Below, in pieces: positions 25,821-49,754 of a stretch of 64,000 bases of DNA. The notes below the pieces were generated by a model, which was given only the letters and a program-made list of their open reading frames with translations, ran no database searches and had not been told where the DNA came from. Origin of the DNA: Ostrea edulis (taxonomy: Eukaryota); the NCBI RefSeq assembly GCF_947568905.1, contig NC_079170.1, positions 35,960,001-36,024,000 on the forward strand, written 5' to 3'. Both the position numbers and the translations under genes were made by a program. Positions within the stretch are counted from its first letter, which is position 1. Every line of letters starts with the position of its first letter.

Positions 25821-28800
25821 CTTACTTACTTAGTCCTCTTCGTGCTGGTCAGCACATAAGGCCGTCACCAGAGACTTCCATGTTGGTCTGTCTTTTGCCC
25901 ATTTCTGGACCTCTCCCCAACTCCAGCTGTTATCTTTCATTTCTTTCTCCACCGATCTTCTCGAGGTCTCTCTTGGTGTTCTCTCTTTCTCTTGCCAGTT
26001 GGTGACCATTTCAAAGCAACCCTTGGGATGGAATTTGGGTACATTCTGCATACATGTCCTATCCACAGCCATTTTCTCTTTCTGATCGTCTGGGATAGAG
26101 GAGTGGTGTTTGTCCTTTTGTACAGTTCGTCATTTGAGATGGTGTTAGGCCAGAAGATGCGCAATATTCTGCGGAGACATCGGGTCTGAAATACATCCAG
26201 CTTGTTGGAAATAGACTTGGTTACTTTCCAAGATTCAGCACCATATAGTAGGACCCCAAGCACGTTGCTCTTGAAGATCTTAATTTTGAAGTTGGTGCTA
26301 AACTATGTTGACCTCCAGATGTTCCGCAGAGCAGCATACGCTACTGTGGCTTTAGAAATGCGAGCTTGTACATCTGCCTCTGAACCCCCATCAGTGGTGA
26401 TCTTATTTCCTAGGTATGGGAAGTAGGTGACATCTTCTATGTTTGTGCCATTTAAAGAGATAGGTTCCTCTGATATGGTATTGACCTTCATGATCTTAGT
26501 TTTGGAGGTGTTTATATGAAGGCAAATTGTTTCAGCTGTTTTTGCGAGCTTGGTGGTTTTTTCTTGCAATGTCTCGATGACGGTGAGATAACAGTGCAAT
26601 ATTGTCCGTAAAATCAAGGTCTTCAAGTACTTCTGTCATACCCCAAGTAATCCCTGTTCGTTTGCTTCTAGTTGTTTTTCGCATAATCCAGTCGATGCAG
26701 AAGGTAAAGAGAAGAGGAGAGAGCAGACATCCCTGTTTCACTCCTGTCATCAATTTAAACTCCTCTGATAGGTTTGATAATTCTGGCATTAAGTTCAGTG
26801 TATTGCATCTTGATGATGGAGATGATTTTATCTGGGATTCCATAATGACGAAGGATTCTTTCTAGGGCTAGGCGATTAACACTATCAAAAGCTTTGGTGA
26901 AGTCGATGAAATTGATGTATAATGGGGAGTTCCATTCATTGCTTTGTTCTAGAATTTGTCTGAGAGCGAATATCTGATCAGCGGACGACTTCCCTTTCCT
27001 AAAACCTGCTTGTTCTTGACGCAGTAAGGGATCTGTTACTTCTGCAATTCTGTCCAGTATCACTCTGCTTAGAACCTTCATGGTAATGGAAAGCAACATT
27101 ATTCCTCTATAGTTGTTACAGTTTGAAAGTATGTCTCATTTCTTTGGTAATTTAACTATAAGGCCGGTTTTCCAGAAGGATGGTGTTTCTTCTGATTCCC
27201 AGATCATCTGTAGGATATTTGTCAAAATTGTAGGTGTCCAGTATTCTTTGGCCTTGAGAAGCTCTGCATGTATCTGATCAATGCCTGCAGCTTTTCCAGT
27301 TTTAAGTTTGGTGATTGCCTTTTTTACCTCTTCTATACTTGGTGGATCAGTATCAATATCTAATGTGTCCGTGGCTGGTATTATTATTGCCTCGTTCTCT
27401 GGGTCTTTCATATTAAATACTTCTTCAAAATGTTCCTTCCAGCATTTCAGTATGATTTCTTCTTTTGATAGTACATTTCCCTGTTTGTCTTTAATTGGTA
27501 GCTCTGATGACTGAAATTTGCCTGCTAATGTTTTTGTAATTCGATAGAGGGTCTGCATGTCTTGTTTAGAAGCTGCTTGTTCTGCCTCATAAGCTAGCTT
27601 TTCAGTGTATGCCTTTCTGTCAGCTCTTGCACTCCTCTTTACTCCAATATTCTGCCTGGAGTTGGTCCTTTTGCCTCTTGGATTTTGTGGACAAGATTTT
27701 ATTTTCTTCTCTTTTCGTTCTTCTACTATTTTCCATGTTTTATCTGAAATCCATTCTTCTTTTTTCTTTCTCTTTGGACCAAGTATTCGTTGACTATTTA
27801 CTATTAATACTTTGTTAAAAGTTTCCATATTGATTTCATCAGGATGTTCCATGAGTGTTGAAAACTTGTTTTGGACTTTTAATTGAATAGATCTCAGTTT
27901 TTGTATCTTTGAGTTTTTGGATGTTGATTGGAGGTGGTCTTCGATCTTTTTTCCTTGATTTCCTCAATTTTAACTTGATTTTTGCCAGTACTAAAGAGTG
28001 GTCACTTCCCACATCAGCCCCTTGTTTTGTAACCACTTCGAGAAGACTACTTCTCCATGCATCTCTTGTTGATGATAATATGGTCAATTTGGTTCTTAGT
28101 ATGACCATCTGGTGAGTTCCATGTTGTCTTATGGATGTCTTTGTGCATGAATATAGTTCCACCAATTACTAGGTCGTTTTCTTGGCAGAAAGTGCATAGT
28201 CTCTCTCCGTTGTTGTTACATTCTCCTATTCCTTACTGGCCTATGATGGTTTCTTTACCTTGGTTGCATTTTCCAACTTTAGCATTTAAGTCCCCAAGGA
28301 TAAGCAGAACATCATGAGATGGTGTGTCGTCTACTACATTTTGTAGGCTGTCATAGAAAGATATTTTCTCTTCATCTTCTCCATCATCTATTGGTGCATA
28401 GCAAACCACAGCAGTCAATTTGGCAAAGGCTGAGTTGTACCTTGCTGTTATTATTCGCTCACTCACAGGTTTCCATTCTAAAAGACTTCTGTGGACCTCC
28501 TTTGTTGTAATAATGGCTACTCCTTTGCAATGATGGTCGTCGGTTCTTCCAGAGTAGAGTATCTGATGTCCTGATACTAGTTGTTTTGATCCACTACCTG
28601 TCCATCTGGCTTCACTAACTCCTAGGAGCTCGATCTTGTAATGCTCCATTTCTCTCACCACTTGTGCTAGTTTTCCTGTTTGGTAGAGGGTCCGCACGTT
28701 CCAGCAGCCCACTCTACGGGTTATTTTCGGTCGAAGGACATCTCCTATCGGGATGGATGATTCACCCGTCATACTTCCATTGTCCTGAATGGTGTCAATC

Positions 28801-29369
28801 CTTCTTCCATCATTTTGTTTTCTGGTTAACGTTTCTGTAGCGTCTTTTGTTTAACATGTTAGGGTTGCTGACCCTAAGCATAACCCCCTGAACTCGGAGG
28901 ACCAGTGGTTTTCTGTTGGGGTTGTCCTTCCCTTAGATGATTGCTTTCCCTTGCTTTCGTGTTCATCTACACAGATTTTCTTTCTGGATTTTCTTCCATA
29001 GCCTTTGACTTGCCAAAACCATCCACAAGGCAGTGGAACTATTTGACCCATAGATGGGGCAAGGTTGGTAAGAGCCAGGGCATGTCCACGCACCGGTGGG
29101 CCTGCACTTTACACCTCTAGGGTCCTTACTACTCCGAGATCCCCTTCATATTAGCCTTGAGTGCTAGACCCAAGTTTCCGTGTGTTGCCCTGAGGAGGTG
29201 TTTGAAGGAGTCTTAAGTAATGTAGAGGCTGGTACTGGCGGGGCGAGATTTCTGCTTTCGCTACTTTCCCTTTCACCTACAAGTAGGCTAGCCAGCGGCA
29301 GTAAGGATCTATAGGCGTTTGATCTTTACCGGACTAGACGCATATCATTACTCTGTGATAAACACCAAC
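25821..29369 (-). mobile_element. Apparently full-length, frameshifted RTE-clade LINE (AP endonuclease + reverse transcriptase)
   Basis: Endonuclease motif VGCWNVRTL (ORF 28772-28233) and RT fragments ([44 protein letters not shown]). (TAAG)n 3' tail. 16-bp TSD ACACACATGTATAAAA at 25805-25820 and 29370-29385. Confidence 0.93.
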
Positions 29370-29409
29370 ACACACATGTATAAAAGACTAAACACAATTA
29401 TATAGAAAC

Positions 29410-38942: not shown

Positions 38943-41900
38943 ATGAGCGGAGGACTTGCTCCTAGTAAAAGCACAGTGTATGTGGGCAATCTGCCATTTT
39001 CCCTAACGAATAATGACATCCATAAAATATTCGAAAAATACGGGCGGGTAGCCAAGTAAGTCCATGTTTATCTGTTTATGTGTGCTGTGCAACACCCCAA
39101 CAGAGAAAGTGTGACAGTTTGTATGTGTGCAATGCAACACCCCAACACTGGCAACAGAGAACGTGTTTCACAGTTTGTATGTGTGCTGTGTAACACCCCA
39201 ACACTGGCAACAGAGAACGTGTTTCACAGTTTGTATGTGTGCTGTGCAACACCCCAACAGAGAAAGTGTTTCACATTTGGTGTGTGTGCTGTGCAATATC
39301 CCAACAGAGGAAGTGTTTTACAGTTTGATCTATTATAAATAGTATTTCGTACTTTAGTTTAGGTTCCAGTCAGATGGCCAAGCATGACTGTGTTATGTGA
39401 TCCCTTTGCTTGTGACTGGTTTGTAACATTAAGTTTAACTTTTTTTTGAAAACAGAAAAGCCTAAACTTTTATTTTGGATGAAAAGCCTATCGGTCTATC
39501 TCAGAGCTGTTTACATGTATGAATTGTCCGTATTTTCCACGGATTTTTAAGTCAAAATATGCTCTACGGATTCACATTGAAAATCCACGATTTAACGTTC
39601 CACGAATCTGGGGGAAAAATCAATTCCCGAAATTTACCGATTGGTATGATAAAAAAGCTTGTCGATTGAATTAAACTGGCTCCCTGCTGATTGGTGCTAC
39701 ACCGAAGAGAGAAGTGAGGTCAATAGGGAGCCAGTTTAGTCAATTAAAGTTACCATTGTTTAAAGTGCACAATTGATATATGTCAAACTTTTAAAAAAGC
39801 ATGGATGTCAAATGCCAGATTGACGAGAATGCAAACAAAACATCCAAACCCATTCAGAGGTTGAAAACAAGAGAATATATGCCCAAATTATAAGGACTCA
39901 TACAGGGTGCATTCACGCTTAGTACCAGGTATATTTCAAATTGGACATTTCATGTATTATGTCTTTTCATTTATTTACACTTTTCCCCTCTGTATAGTTT
40001 ACTTTATGCATGTCTGTTGTTCTTGCATGCCCTTAATGGGGCCCAAATTTTAAAAAAAGACAAACACAAAACAACAGTCTCATTCTCACAACTTTCACTT
40101 TGTTTCAACCAGAATTTAACCATTGTTTCTGTCCTTATTAATAAAGTTTTCTGTTGGTCTTAAATCAGTAGCTTGGATATTTCATTTCACAACTTCAAAG
40201 TTTGAACGGTGTTGAGCCCCTACTTATGTTGAAAATAAAGTGGACATTTTGGCAGTAAGAACAAAAACAATTTCTCATCTTCATAAATGAGCCACGGAGA
40301 CCCCATGGTCAACAATAGTCTTTATGGTTTTCTTTATAGTTTGATTTTTTCTTTGATCGTTCAGGGTTTGGCAACTCAGTTTCTTTACCATATTTTGGTC
40401 GAATTCACACATTGTTTAACTGGGTGTTTTGCTCTTGCATAATATCTTTTTTTTATATTCTTCCAGAGTTACAGTTTTAAAGGATGATTCAAGAAGAAGT
40501 AAGGGTGTGGCGTTCATCATGTTTATAGAGAAGGATTCAGCCTACAAGGCTGTTCGTGCCCTGAACAAGACAGAGGTACGGAATCTTCTTGCCGTTACTG
40601 AGAGATTTATTTCTCTAATATTAATGTAATGCTTTCATGTGTCACTGATACTGCACTATGACAAGTTAACTGTATGTTCCAAGTCACTGTTCTTGCAGCA
40701 TGTTTTGTAGGACCCTGGTGTTACAATTAGCATTAGACAAGTTCATATTAATTTGAGGAAATGAGTAATTATAATTGTTGAAAATCTTGGATAATTACTG
40801 CCATGGATAGTGTTCAGGCCTTAAAATGTCTCTCCATCAACCCGAGATCAACAAGAGGATCAATGAATTTAAAACATAAGTCTGTCCATTGTGCTAGTAA
40901 AAAATCATGTTTCATTTATGAAAAAACAAGGCCTTCACCCATAATAGACCACTTAACCTACATGTAGGTTAATACGTCAGTTTTTGATAAAGAGTCTGAT
41001 ATGTTATACTTACTTACTTAATCCTCTTCGTGCTTGAAAGCACATAAGGCCTTCACTGAGGATCGCCATCTCTGTCTGTCTGCTGCCATGTTCTGAATCC
41101 GGCCCCAAGTCCATCCACACTCCTTCATCTCTTTCTCTACTGATCGCCGCCATGTTTCCTTTGGTCTCCCTCTATTTCTCTTTCCTGCTGGTGTCCCTCT
41201 CAGGGCAATCTTTGGAATTGATGTTGCTCCCATCCTGTGGACATGGCCGATCCATTTCCATCATGTCATCTTGATCATCTCAGATATTGGTGATGTTGAC
41301 GTTCTCTGATATAGATCTTTGTTGCTGATGGTGTTGGGCCAGAAGACCTTCAGAATCCGTCGTAGGCATTTGGTCTGGAAGACATCCAATCTGTGGACAA
41401 TACCTTTGGTCACCTTCCACGACTCAGCACCATATAGGAGGACTCCAATAATGTTACTCTTGAATATCCTGATCTTGGTCTTGATGCTGATGGCTGTTGA
41501 CTTCCAGATGTTCCTCAGGCTTGCGAAGGCTGCTCTTGCTTTGGCTATTCTGCTCTCTACATCAGATGTTGAATCCCCATCGGCTGTGATCTTACTGCCG
41601 AGGTAAACAAACTCTGAGACTTCCTCTACTACATTGTTCCCAATAGTCACTTCTCTTTCTGTTTTGTTGTTAACTTTCATGATCTTCGTCTTTCCGGCGT
41701 TGATGTTGAGACCTATCTGGCTGCCGTAGTTTGCCAAGTCGGTTGTCTTCCCTTGGATGTGTTGGAAACGATGAGCCAGGAGTGCGATGTCATCTGTGAA
41801 GTCTAGATCTTCTAGAGACTTTTCAAATGTCCAAAGCAATCCCCTGTTGTTCTGACTGGTTGTCTTCTTCATCACCCAGTCAATACACATCACAAAAAGT

Positions 41901-44900
41901 AGGGGAGATAGTAAACATCCCTGTCTCACTCCAGTCTGTAGTGGGAAGCTGTTTGTGAGGTTTGTGCCACAGATCACTCTGGCCTGGAAGTCCTGATAGA
42001 GCATCTTGATGATGGTTATGATCTTGTCTGGTATTCCGTAGTGTGCCATGATCTTCCACATTGCAGGTCGATGGATACTGTCAAATGCCTTGGCGAAGTC
42101 TATGAAATTGGCATATACTGTGGCGTTCCATTCGTTACTCTGTTCCATAATCTGTCTCAATGTGAAGATATGGTCTGCGCACGACCTTCCTCTCCGAAAC
42201 CCTGCCTGCTCATTCCGTAGGAGAGGGTTCACCATGTCTGTTATTCTGTTCAAGATGACTCTGCAGAGGACCTTGCTTGTGATGGACAGTAGCATGCATC
42301 CCCTCCAGTTGTTGGTGTCTGTCAGGTCTCCTTTCTTGGGCAGCTTCACAATCAGGCCAATTTTCCATTGGCTGGGTGCTGTCTCTGTCTCCCAGATGTT
42401 CTGCAGGATATCCGTCAGTACTCTTGGTGTTACCACGTCCTCTGCTTTCAGCATCTCTGCGTGTACCTGGTCACATCCCGGTGCTTTTCCATTTTTGAGG
42501 GTCCTGATGGCTTTGGTGACCTCTTCCAGTGTTGGTTTATCAGTGTCTATATCAAGGACTTCATCCGAAGGGCTGATCTCTGCTTCTGCTGATGGGTCCT
42601 CTCTGTTGAGCACTCGTTCAAAGTGTTCCTTCTAACATGTTAGCTCCTCTTCCGTACAGCTTGTCAGTTCCCCATCCTGTTTCCAGACTGGTATTTCTGC
42701 ATTCTTGAAGCCTCCGCTGAGAGATTTAGAGATATGGTATAATGTGCCCATATCCTTTCTAGCAGCTGCATCCTCTGCATCAGTAGCTAACCTCTTGATG
42801 TAGTCCTTCTTTGCGCTCTTCTTGACCTCTTTGTCCTGTTGAGAATATGTTCTCTTCAAGCTCTCCTTCAGCCTTGGTGACTTAGTTGACAGAAGTTTGC
42901 TCTTCGTAGCTTTTCTCCTTACAATCATATCCCAGGTTTTGGCTGATATCCATTCTTTCTTCCTCCTTCTCAACCCAAGTGCCTCCTGTCCTACTTCCAT
43001 CATCACTGTGTTGAAGTCATCTAGGTCGAGTTGCTGTTGATCTTGTAGCACCTCGAATCTGTTCCTGACTTTCAGCTGGAATGCTCTCATTATCACTGGA
43101 TCTTTCAGTTTCTGTACATCAAAAAGCAGTGATCTTTGTTCCCCTTTCTTGGCTTTCCTCAACTTCAGTTTCAGCTTTGTCAGGATAAGAGAATGGTCAC
43201 TTCCAGCATCAGCTCCCCGTAAAACTCTTACATCTTGTAGTGTCCCTCTCCATCTCTTGTTTATAGGACATGGTCTATCTGATTCCTGGTCTGCCCATCT
43301 GGCGATGTCCATGTCCATTTGTGGATGTTCTTGTGCTGGAAGATGGTGCCTCCAATGACCAGGTTATTGTCCTTGCAGAAGTTGACAAGTCTGCTTCCAT
43401 TGTCATTGATGATACCACATCCTTGTTTTCCCATCACCCGTTCTTTTCCTTCATTGTTTGTCCCAACTTTTGCATTGAGATCTCCTAATAGCAGAAGCAT
43501 GTCGTGAACTGGTGTCTCTTCCACTGTCGTCTGAAGTTGGTCGTAGAATGCCTCTTTCTCTTCCTCCTCGGAGTCTTCTATAGGAGAGTAGCAGATAACG
43601 ACTGTCAGCTTGGCATACATACTTTGAATGAAATCTTGAAGTCAGAATTCTGTCACTCACTGGCTTCCATCCAATCATGCATCTACTAAGTCTTCTGTTG
43701 GTCATAAGACCTACTCCTCTGCTATGATGGTCATCCTTCTTTCCTGAATAAATGATGGTATGTGCCGTAGCTAACTTCCAGGATCCACTTCCAGTCCACC
43801 TCGTTTCACAAACTCCTAGCATCTCGATGTTATTCAACTCCATCTCCTTGATGACTTGTGCTAGCCTTCCTGTTTGTTAGAGGGTGCGTGCGTTCCAGCA
43901 TCCAACTCTACATACGTCTTTAGGGGTGAGAACGTCTGCCGTCTGGATGTCAGTGTCCTGTCGGCTTTGGCTGTCATCCGTCATGGATCCAGTATCCTGG
44001 GTAGCGTCTATCCTCTCCCCAGTTCCAAGTTCCTCAGTGTTTGTTTCTGTAACGGGTTCGGTTTTTTACATGGCAGGGTTGCTGGCCCTGCGCACAACCC
44101 TCCTCCTTTCTCATCCGGGCTTGGGACCAGCCATGGCGGAGTTCTGATATGTTATAGATGTTGCAAAAAATTTAGAGAAAGCAACAACTCTATTTCAATC
44201 TTTGATTTTGATTCAGATTATCTGTCTAATAGTTCTGAATAAATTAAAATTAATTATCAAAACTTACATTTTGATATCTTTTGATAGTAAACATTAATAA
44301 TGTATTACATATCATCATTAGTCACCAGAAGGACAGCAAATCTAGAACAGGACCAGTAACTCTGCATGGTTACTGGTCATGTAGACCACTGAGTTAAAAA
44401 ATTAGTCACAAGAAGGACAGCTAGACAAATCTAGAACAGGACCGGTAGCTCGGCATGGTTACTGGTCATGTAGACCACTGAGTTAAAATTAGTCACAAGA
44501 AGGACAGGTAGACAAATCTAGAACAGGACCGGTAGCTCTGCATGGTTACTGGTCATGTAGACCACTGAGTTAAAATTAGTCACAAGAAGGACAGGTAGAC
44601 AAATCTAGAACAGGACCGGTAACTCTGCATGTTTACTGGTTTTGTAGACCATTGAGTTAAAATTAGTTACAAGAAGGACAGCTAGACAAATCTAGAACAG
44701 GACCGGTAAATCTGCATGGTCACCGGTCCTGTAGACTAGTGGGTTAAAATGCTAAGGTGTGTACATTGGTCATAGATATGTTGAATTATATGTGTTAATT
44801 ATTTTATCATATTTCATGATGTAGATGTTTGGTAGGACTATAAAATGCAACATTGCAAAAGACAATGGCAGGACTACAGATTTTATTCGGAGGAAAAACT

Positions 44901-49371: not shown

Positions 49372-49754
49372 ATTAGTTAGGGCTATACGGACCATGGGAT
49401 ATCAGTCTGAATAGCTCATTGGTTAGAGCACCTGACTAGTATTGCAGGAGTCCCGGGTTCGATTCCTGGTCCAGTCATAGATTTTCTCCTATACTACATT
49501 TGGTGCCGTTGACCACTCCTGCACTACAGGTTGTCCTGCCAGGGGCAAACAGAATCTGGGTTGTGTGTCATTGAAGGAGGTAGGAATGTAGTAGCTGGCA
49601 CTGTACGGACCGTGGATAGCTCAGTGGTTAGAGCACCTGACTAGTATTGCAGGGGTCCTGGATAGCTCAGTGGTTAGAGCACCTGACTAGTAATCCAGGG
49701 GTCCCGGGTTCGATTCTCAGTCCAGCCATGGATTTTCTCCTCTCCTATGTTACA
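49372..49754 (+). mobile_element. Miniature LTR retrotransposon (TRIM) with tRNA-Thr-like LTRs
   Basis: LTR1 ends TACA at 49498, followed by PBS-like TGGTGCCGT at 49501. PPT GAAGGAGGTAGGAA is at 49573-49586. LTR2 runs TGTAG (49587) to TGTTACA (49754). Both LTRs have A and B boxes. The left boundary is approximate and no TSD was seen. Confidence 0.72.

What the first reader, a model, noticed from the sequence alone, without database searches (positions are those of the whole stretch)
44095..44143. RTE LINE begins at the cleavage site of a twister ribozyme
Seen: the element's first bases, next to its TSD, are (A)ACUCCGCC-AUG-GCUGGUCCCAAGCCCGGAU-GAGAAA-GGAGGAGGGUUG, with P2 CUCC/GGAG and P4 CUGG/CCGG. 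Established: P1-type twisters cleave at U^AA just after the P1 5' strand, and twister-processed RTE 5' ends are known in Schistosoma. Inference: the inserted RNA was the self-cleaved 3' product, so the P1 5' strand is missing. The flank (AUAUCAG) does not rebuild P1, so only copies whose target site restores P1 would regain cleavage. That would couple insertion site to element activity in a bivalve.
Basis: partly seen in the sequence, partly recalled or inferred. Interest (0 to 1): 0.8.

Follow-up and report, generated by a model that had tools for sequence, protein, structure and literature searches.

The report
Twister ribozyme heading an oyster RTE
A dead copy of an oyster jumping gene (an RTE LINE) begins exactly at the cut site of a small self-cutting RNA, the twister ribozyme, which is the same 5'-end trimming device already shown for Perere-3 elements of blood flukes, so this is a solid new example in a new phylum and not a new mechanism.

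Summary
On the minus strand, a 3.1-kb RTE LINE (41009-44143) with a broken ORF and a (TAAG)3 tail is flanked by a 14-nt target-site duplication. Its first bases, AA-CUCC-GCC..GGUCCCAAGCCCGG..GGAG-GAGGG-UUGU, match Rfam twister-P1 at 38.8 bits (E 2.8e-7). That is below the gathering score because the auxiliary P3 stem is absent.

Other copies in the same species end at the same base: 8 contigs of one run break at 44143 into unlike flanks. So do about 20 independent insertions in metagenome and ENA contigs. P4, and P2 in distant relatives, show compensatory changes.

The whole 5' UTR (twister, a covarying hairpin, then GCUACAGAAAC) is homologous to that of a Schistosoma Perere-3-like element. 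The mechanism is therefore the published one (Liu et al. 2021).

Flank-to-P1 pairing across insertions is at chance (2.07 of 4), and published large-scale assays find P1 dispensable. Liu et al. had already raised that idea.

A sister RTE in the same window is headed by an HDV-like core instead, and the RT tree interleaves leader types.

The scan noted another twister-headed RTE elsewhere in this genome (s1-301888).

The parts
44143..44156 (.). 5' copy of the target-site duplication (TCTGATATGTTATA on the + strand). Base 44143 is shared with the element's first A.
   Evidence: Exact 14-nt direct repeat with 40995-41008.
44094..44143 (-). P3-less type-P1 twister ribozyme as the 3' cleavage product. 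AA 44143-44142; P2 44141-44138 with 44106-44103; GCC 44137-44135; P4 44130-44127 with 44118-44115; L4 UCCCAAGC 44126-44119; GAGGG 44102-44098; P1 3' strand UUGU 44097-44094.
   Evidence: Rfam RF03160 at 38.8 bits, E 2.8e-7. P4 covariation and a paired indel in 19 homologues. Own model R1 scores it 113 bits, but this row helped build the model.
44144..44148 (-). Flank that would act as N-1 (G 44144) and the P1 5' strand (AUCA 44148-44145). It is target-site DNA, not part of the element.
   Evidence: The CM alignment pairs 3 of 4 positions with UUGU. Flanks of other copies pair at chance level.
44073..44091 (-). Conserved hairpin SL2 (GCAGGG-CCAGCAA-CCCUGC) directly after the twister.
   Evidence: 94.7% of cells paired and 4 of 6 pairs with compensatory changes across 19 elements, including Schistosoma and elements without a twister.
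44043..44053 (-). Conserved 5'-UTR box GUUACAGAAAC.
   Evidence: Near-invariant in alignments A4 and A5 across all leader types.
41021..43984 (-). RTE ORF (APE + RT + DUF6451). ATG at 43984-43982. The frame is broken near 43620-43650 and at about 43264, so this copy is dead.
   Evidence: Pfam hits. tblastn against P0121 gives three pieces covering residues 1-992 at 61-62% identity. It is 90% identical to the intact 991-aa ORF of L036.
41009..41020 (-). 3' tail (TAAG)3. The first TAA is the stop codon.
   Evidence: The same tail occurs in L002, L003, L025 and L036.
40995..41008 (.). 3' copy of the target-site duplication.

Best explanation
The first 50 bases of this RTE LINE are a minimal type-P1 twister ribozyme: P2, P4 and both pseudoknot partners are present and the auxiliary P3 stem is absent. 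An RTE of this lineage is transcribed as part of a longer read-through RNA. The twister folds and cuts between the upstream base (N-1) and the first A. This discards all upstream host RNA and leaves a 5'-AA end. That RNA is translated and copied into a new site by target-primed reverse transcription. Every full-length insertion therefore begins at AA, next to its target-site duplication. Because P1 is dispensable, the ribozyme works whatever lies upstream, as HDV-like ribozymes do in other LINEs. Shown here: the motif, the TSD, the shared 5' end of many independent copies, covariation, and homology to the Schistosoma Perere-3 leader. Inferred: cleavage of the oyster sequence itself, by analogy with experiments on Schistosoma T-variants. 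This particular copy is a dead relic with a broken ORF, though its ribozyme core looks intact.
For: The sequence and TSD are as described, and the twister-P1 CM hit has E 2.8e-7. Same species: 8 contigs of run X12 align up to 44143 and then run into unlike sequence (agreement 0.51). Word depth falls from the 3' end to the 5' end, as in 5'-truncated LINE families. L002 is a relative (RT about 66% aa identical to the window copy) with TSD TAATGCATGGTGGT directly before AACUCC. A metagenome scan gave 28 loci. In 19 distinct 5' ends the flanks lose all similarity exactly upstream of AA; 16 have two or more A, two have one A and one has none. An RTE ORF follows at a fixed distance in lineages down to 45% aa identity, and in L027 at 27% with a P3-bearing twister. 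Covariation: 95.7% of cells paired; P4 has 2 compensatory pairs plus a paired insertion/deletion. P2 is UCCU/AGGA in L012 and CUCU/AGAG in L038, against CUCC/GGAG here. The Schistosoma mattheei Perere-3-like locus has a twister (56.2 bits) followed by the same SL2 and GCUA.A.AAAC box. Experiments on that family show cleavage in vitro and in vivo giving a 5'-AA end, and TSDs next to the cleavage site (PMC8501958). The window's twister differs from that of the intact family member L036 by one base, turning a C-G pair in P4 into U.G.
Against: The score is below Rfam's gathering threshold, 38.8 against 67.2 bits. The experimentally studied Schistosoma type also falls below it, at 56.2. The 3' strand of L2 carries three extra bases relative to the consensus. 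The nested MFE fold is no more stable than shuffles (z -1.05), but that calculation cannot see the pseudoknots. No RNA reads were available, so no 5'-OH end at AA has been seen in oyster RNA. No cleavage assay exists for this sequence.
Confidence: 0.85

Rival explanations
1. One reading: the ribozyme is real, but a new copy regains cleavage only if its target site happens to rebuild the P1 5' strand. Insertion site would then decide whether a copy can be a source element.
For: P1 5' does come from the flank or TSD. Liu et al. 2021 raise the same possibility. One intact family member, L036, has a flank ACAA that pairs 4 of 4 with UUGU, but the flanks of that contig may be an assembly artefact.
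Against: Flank-to-UUGU pairing over 15 insertions averages 2.07 of 4, the chance value. The P1 3' strand is all G/U, so any base has a 50% chance of pairing. CHiTA reports P1 as dispensable with no impact on self-cleavage (PMC11662667). N-1 identity is irrelevant. Most insertions are dead ends, so this census cannot exclude a modest kinetic effect.
Confidence: 0.1
2. The motif is an inherited but no longer active relic. The uniform 5' end reflects a fixed transcription start or another processing step, not self-cleavage.
For: No cleavage or RNA data exist for oyster. The score is below Rfam's gathering threshold. Sister lineages do without a twister.
Against: All pseudoknot and catalytic-site bases are invariant across lineages with only 45% aa identity, and the stems covary. 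The end coincides to the base with the known twister scissile bond. The lineages that lack a twister and were checked carry another self-cleaving-type core instead, which argues that cleavage itself is under selection.
Confidence: 0.04
3. Chance resemblance to a twister in a GC-rich leader.
For: The motif is short and below the gathering score.
Against: E 2.8e-7. The core occurs once, against 0.04 expected. The same motif sits at the same place in dozens of related elements and in Schistosoma.
Confidence: 0.01

Closest known systems
T-variant twister ribozymes at the 5' end of Perere-3 (RTE clade) in Schistosoma mansoni (Liu et al., NAR 2021, PMC8501958)
   Same: The ribozyme class is the same. 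P2 (CUCC/GGAG), L4 (GUCCCAAGC), GAGGG and the UUG start of the P1 3' strand are identical. The position at the element's first base, next to the TSD, is the same. So are the downstream hairpin and the GCUA.A.AAAC box. The RT is 48% identical.
   Different: The host is a bivalve mollusc. The P3 stem-loop is replaced by a 4-5 nt linker. The P1 3' strand is UUGU, not UUGG. No experiments exist for the oyster sequence.
HDV-like ribozymes at the 5' ends of R2, RTE and other non-LTR elements (Eickbush & Eickbush 2010; Ruminski et al. 2011, as cited in PMC8501958 and PMC13725137)
   Same: The job is the same: cut the element out of a read-through transcript and leave the ribozyme on the element's 5' end, whatever lies upstream.
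   Different: The fold is different. The HDV-like ribozyme cuts at its very first base and needs nothing upstream. The twister nominally leaves its P1 5' strand behind. A sister RTE in this same window uses an HDV-like core.
Rfam RF03160, type-P1 twister; minimal twisters without auxiliary stems
   Same: The core is P1/L1, P2/L2, P4/L4 plus two pseudoknots. P0, P3 and P5 are auxiliary (PMC11662667). From memory, the crystallised rice twister Osa-1-4 also lacks P3.
   Different: The score is below the family's gathering score because the model expects P3. P1 is not encoded by the element.

Membership tests
type-P1 twister ribozyme (RF03160) | Conserved L4 loop GUCCCAAGC with partners for both pseudoknots (GGG of GAGGG; GC after P2) | tested here: met
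   All are present at 44126-44119, 44100-44098 and 44137-44136. They are invariant or nearly so in 19 homologues.
type-P1 twister ribozyme (RF03160) | P2 and P4 helices supported by covariation | tested here: met
   P4 has 2 pairs with changes on both sides plus a paired indel. P2 is invariant in the close set and changes compensatorily in L012 (UCCU/AGGA) and L038 (CUCU/AGAG).
type-P1 twister ribozyme (RF03160) | Scissile N^AA directly 5' of P2 | tested here: met
   G^AA at 44144/44143. G*AA is cleaved in Schistosoma variants.
type-P1 twister ribozyme (RF03160) | P1 stem closing the ribozyme | tested here: inconclusive
   The 5' strand is flank DNA. It pairs at 3 of 4 positions here and at chance level across copies. 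P1 is reported as dispensable.
type-P1 twister ribozyme (RF03160) | Score at or above Rfam's gathering threshold | tested here: not met
   38.8 against 67.2 bits, because P3 is missing. The Schistosoma homologue also falls short, at 56.2.
type-P1 twister ribozyme (RF03160) | Site-specific self-cleavage | not testable with these tools
   This needs an in vitro transcription and cleavage assay. No raw RNA reads were on offer.
RTE-clade LINE (Perere-3-like) | Single ORF with an N-terminal AP endonuclease and a reverse transcriptase, about 3.2 kb overall | tested here: met
   Exo_endo_phos_2, RVT_1 and DUF6451. Full-length alignment to a 992-aa RTE ORF. The element is 3135 bp.
RTE-clade LINE (Perere-3-like) | Short 3' UTR ending in a simple repeat, flanked by a TSD | tested here: met
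   (TAAG)3 overlaps the stop codon, and the TSD is 14 nt.
RTE-clade LINE (Perere-3-like) | RT groups with Schistosoma Perere-3-like elements | tested here: met
   48% aa identity to Schistosoma RTs. It lies in one clade with L035 relative to L027 in the ML tree. The 5' UTR is homologous.
HDV-like ribozyme-headed RTE | P3/L3 core CCUCCUC.GGG followed by a P1 3' strand complementary to the element's first bases | tested here: not met
   Absent from this copy. Present in the second RTE of the window and in L004 and L005.

The most novel reading that the evidence does not exclude
Within one RTE subclade, and within this single oyster window, sister lineages carry interchangeable 5' self-cleaving modules. 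A 50-nt twister or a roughly 480-nt leader opening with an HDV-like core is joined at the same point (GGGUU) to a conserved hairpin-plus-box UTR. The modules have been swapped at least four times. Selection would then act on 5' self-cleavage as such. The twister-RTE alliance would be old (flatworm and mollusc, with a P3-bearing form in a 27%-identical LINE) or horizontally spread.
Probability: 0.5. Interest if true: 0.65.

Novelty: new member of a known kind. Interest (0 to 1): 0.45.

Why it matters
In the literature I could search, the twister-LINE link rests on a single species, Schistosoma mansoni. These data show the same leader in an oyster genome and in many unidentified marine eukaryote contigs, including an intact 991-aa family member and a 385-nt non-autonomous derivative. 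The device is therefore a general feature of an RTE subclade. A P3-less, 50-nt version suffices. This gives a natural, minimal, flank-independent 5' processing module. It also gives a comparative data set of twister-headed and HDV-like-headed sister elements for asking why LINEs need a self-cleaved 5' end.

Tried and rejected
- Rfam at gathering thresholds finds only two tRNA-like hits in the window. The twister appears only in E-value mode.
- The RT-piece protein search gave no near-identical oyster proteins; the best hit was 66%. The family member L036 came only through the N-terminal search with L002's ORF.
- L001 has no twister and is probably 5' truncated.
- I considered an alternative pairing of GGGUUG with the downstream CAACCC. 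I dropped it because relatives such as L009 lack CAACCC, while the SL2 hairpin covaries.
- A twister-like stretch in the L004 leader (GGCCCCAAGC) is not conserved in the window's second RTE, so I take it as chance.
- Rfam finds no HDV-family hit in the non-twister leaders. The HDV-like reading there rests on my own motif-and-pairing script.
- I did not identify the leaders of L006, L037 and L039.
- The read laying 'joints' that skip about 3.2-3.4 kb do not match the exact empty site. They look like other copies of the repeat into which the RTE inserted, so I make no claim of insertion polymorphism.
- All runs were contigs and none was on record as RNA, so expression and RNA ends could not be examined.

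Full report
**What is there.** Read on the minus strand, window 44143-44094 is AACUCCGCCAUGGCUGGUCCCAAGCCCGGAUGAGAAAGGAGGAGGGUUGU. It opens an element that runs down to 41009.
- The ATG is at 43984.
- The ORF pieces carry Exo_endo_phos_2, RVT_1 and DUF6451.
- Together they align to residues 1-992 of an intact RTE protein at 61-62% identity, in three frames.
- The stop codon is part of a (TAAG)3 tail at 41020-41009.
- The element is flanked by an exact 14-nt direct repeat at 40995-41008 and 44143-44156.

This is a full-length but dead RTE-clade LINE of 3135 bp. Its TSD touches the AA. One A is shared with the repeat, so the start is 44143 or 44142.

**Is the twister real?** Rfam's default scan lists only two tRNA-like hits. 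In E-value mode, twister-P1 (RF03160) matches 44148-44094(-) over the full model at 38.8 bits, E 2.8e-7.
- The shortfall against the gathering score of 67.2 comes from the P3 stem-loop, which a CAUGG linker replaces.
- P3 is an auxiliary stem-loop in the published structural model (PMC11662667).
- The conserved letters are all present: AA, GCC, GGUCCCAAGCCCGG, AAA and GAGGG.
- The Schistosoma homologue, whose family is experimentally active, also scores below gathering, at 56.2 bits.
- The 14-nt core occurs once in the window, against 0.04 expected.

**Do other copies start at the same base?**
- *Same species.* I laid contigs of three DNA runs from three studies on 40700-44500. In run X12, eight contigs align up to 44143 and then continue into mutually unlike, AT-rich sequence (agreement 0.51). 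Word depth rises from about 200-300 in the 5' half to several thousand at the 3' end, against 24-59 in the unique flank. That is the usual signature of a 5'-truncated LINE family. Junction-spanning contigs without differences show that this insertion is present in all three runs.
- *Close relatives.* L002 (RT about 66% aa identical to the window copy) has TSD TAATGCATGGTGGT directly before AACUCC. Its near-twin L003 sits in a different flank.
- *Metagenome scan.* A scan for GGTCCCAAGCCC-N10-20-GAGGGTTGTGC returned 28 loci. After duplicates are removed, 19 RTE-type 5' ends align perfectly from the AA onward and not at all upstream. Thirteen have AA, three have AAA, two have a single A and one has none. 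This spread resembles the published 0-7A T-variants.
- *ORF position.* The RTE ORF starts 145-165 nt after the core in lineages from 100% down to 45% identity. In L027 (27% identity) it follows a P3-bearing twister.
- *Intact family member.* L036 carries an intact 991-aa ORF that is 90% identical to the window copy. Its twister differs by one base, a C-G pair in P4 that is U.G in the window.

**Structure support.** On the 19-sequence alignment, 95.7% of cells pair, against 30-63% with slid partners.
- P4 has two pairs with changes on both sides plus an inserted U-A or A-U pair that is present or absent on both strands together.
- The pseudoknot partners never vary.
- P2 is invariant in this set.
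- In more distant elements P2 changes compensatorily: UCCU/AGGA in L012 and CUCU/AGAG in L038.
- A hairpin directly after the twister (SL2, 44091-44073) has four of six pairs with compensatory changes.

**Relation to the known case.** Liu et al. 2021 showed that twister 'T-variants' head Perere-3 in S. mansoni. They cleave in vitro and in reporter cells to give a 5'-AA end. TSDs abut the cleavage site and supply the P1 5' strand. I fetched a Schistosoma mattheei locus through its RT, which is 48% identical to the window's. Its twister is followed by the same SL2, an A-rich stretch and GCUA.A.AAAC. The oyster leader is therefore homologous to the Perere-3 leader, minus P3. In the searchable literature up to November 2026, that paper is the only one tying twisters to a LINE. 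A 2024 survey lists bivalves among species with predicted twisters but does not discuss retrotransposons beyond citing it.

The claim was that the flank does not rebuild P1, so only lucky insertions regain cleavage.
- The CM pairs AUCA with UUGU at three of four positions.
- Over 15 insertions the mean is 2.07 of 4. Chance gives exactly that, because U and G each pair with two of the four bases.
- CHiTA treats P1 as dispensable and found no impact on cleavage. Imperfections at N-1 are tolerated.
- G*AA, C*AA and A*AA substrates are cleaved.
- The twister therefore most likely works like an HDV-like ribozyme, independent of what lies upstream.
- A modest kinetic effect of P1 cannot be excluded from sequence alone. 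The idea is also not new.

**Beyond the finding.** The window holds a second RTE on the minus strand (25833 to about 29371) with a 16-nt TSD.
- It is 93% identical in protein to an Ostrea edulis element (L005) and close to a Saccostrea element (L004).
- These three lack the twister but share the UTR from GGGUU onward, that is SL2 and the box.
- Their long leaders contain CCUCCUC(R)GGG followed by six bases. The only perfect upstream partner of those six bases lies at the element's start. It is the very first bases in L004 (UCUGCU/AGCAGA). It is within the 2-nt TSD ambiguity in the window copy (GUGUUG 29371-29366 with CAACAC).
- That is the P3/L3/P1 arrangement of HDV-like ribozymes, with P1 covariation. 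Rfam models do not detect it.
- On an ML tree of the ORFs, twister-headed and otherwise-headed elements interleave. At least four changes are needed, and the AU test rejects twister-headed rows as one clade at p 2e-7.
- L012 shows a 385-nt non-autonomous element with a 17-nt TSD. It starts at AA-UCCU-GCC, keeps only a remnant of the RTE C-terminus, and ends in (GTT)n.

**Verdict.** The main inference, a self-cleaved 5' end, is well supported comparatively but untested biochemically. The P1-gating idea is not supported. It is a new member, in a new phylum and in a P3-less form, of a known kind. The leader-swap pattern is the part a specialist might find new.

Noticed in passing
window 25833-29371 (-): Second, related RTE copy with TSD TTTTATACATGTGTGT and a leader of about 580 nt. 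It has no twister. Instead it carries an HDV-like core CCUCCUCAGGG (29198-29188) followed by CAACAC, which pairs with GUGUUG at the element's 5' end (29371-29366). L004 (Saccostrea) and L005 (Ostrea edulis) show the same arrangement, and L004 has a different but still complementary P1 (UCUGCU/AGCAGA). Rfam models do not detect it.
   Followed up: partly
window 44073-44091 (-) and 28878-28860 (-): A hairpin (SL2) and a GYUACAGAAAC box are conserved with compensatory changes in every element of this RTE subclade, whatever heads it, including Schistosoma. Their function is unknown; translation or RNP assembly is possible.
   Followed up: partly
loci L002-L039 (RT tree): Leader type (P3-less twister, twister with P3, HDV-like or other) is interleaved on the ORF tree, with at least 4 changes. 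The leaders of L006, L037 and L039 remain unidentified.
   Followed up: partly
L012:554-937 (also L016): A 385-nt non-autonomous element with a 17-nt TSD (1 mismatch). It begins at the twister AA (P2 UCCU/AGGA), keeps only a remnant of the RTE C-terminus, and ends in (GTT)n. The organism is unknown.
   Followed up: partly
L003:128-147 and L011:132-151: Two insertions of one family in otherwise different flanks share the five bases GGTCT directly upstream of AA. This could be target preference or a few uncleaved leader bases carried along.
   Followed up: no
alignment A3, column 11: The base before the AA is U (11 of 19) or G (7 of 19), with C once (the no-A copy L022); A cannot be scored, because a trailing A counts as part of the element. 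In L036 it is C. This may be a weak target-site or junction bias.
   Followed up: no
L035:1775-1879 (-): A second twister-plus-SL2 leader (58 bits with model R1) lies 2 kb from the first in the Schistosoma mattheei locus, on the opposite strand.
   Followed up: no
window 49405-49477 and 49656-49728 (+): Two tRNA-like units 251 bp apart (Rfam tRNA, 43.6 and 35.3 bits).
   Followed up: no
window 44160-44500 and 40900-40995: The RTE sits inside other repetitive DNA. There are about 60-nt tandem units upstream, and many contigs join the two flanks at varying points when laid at 80% likeness.
   Followed up: no
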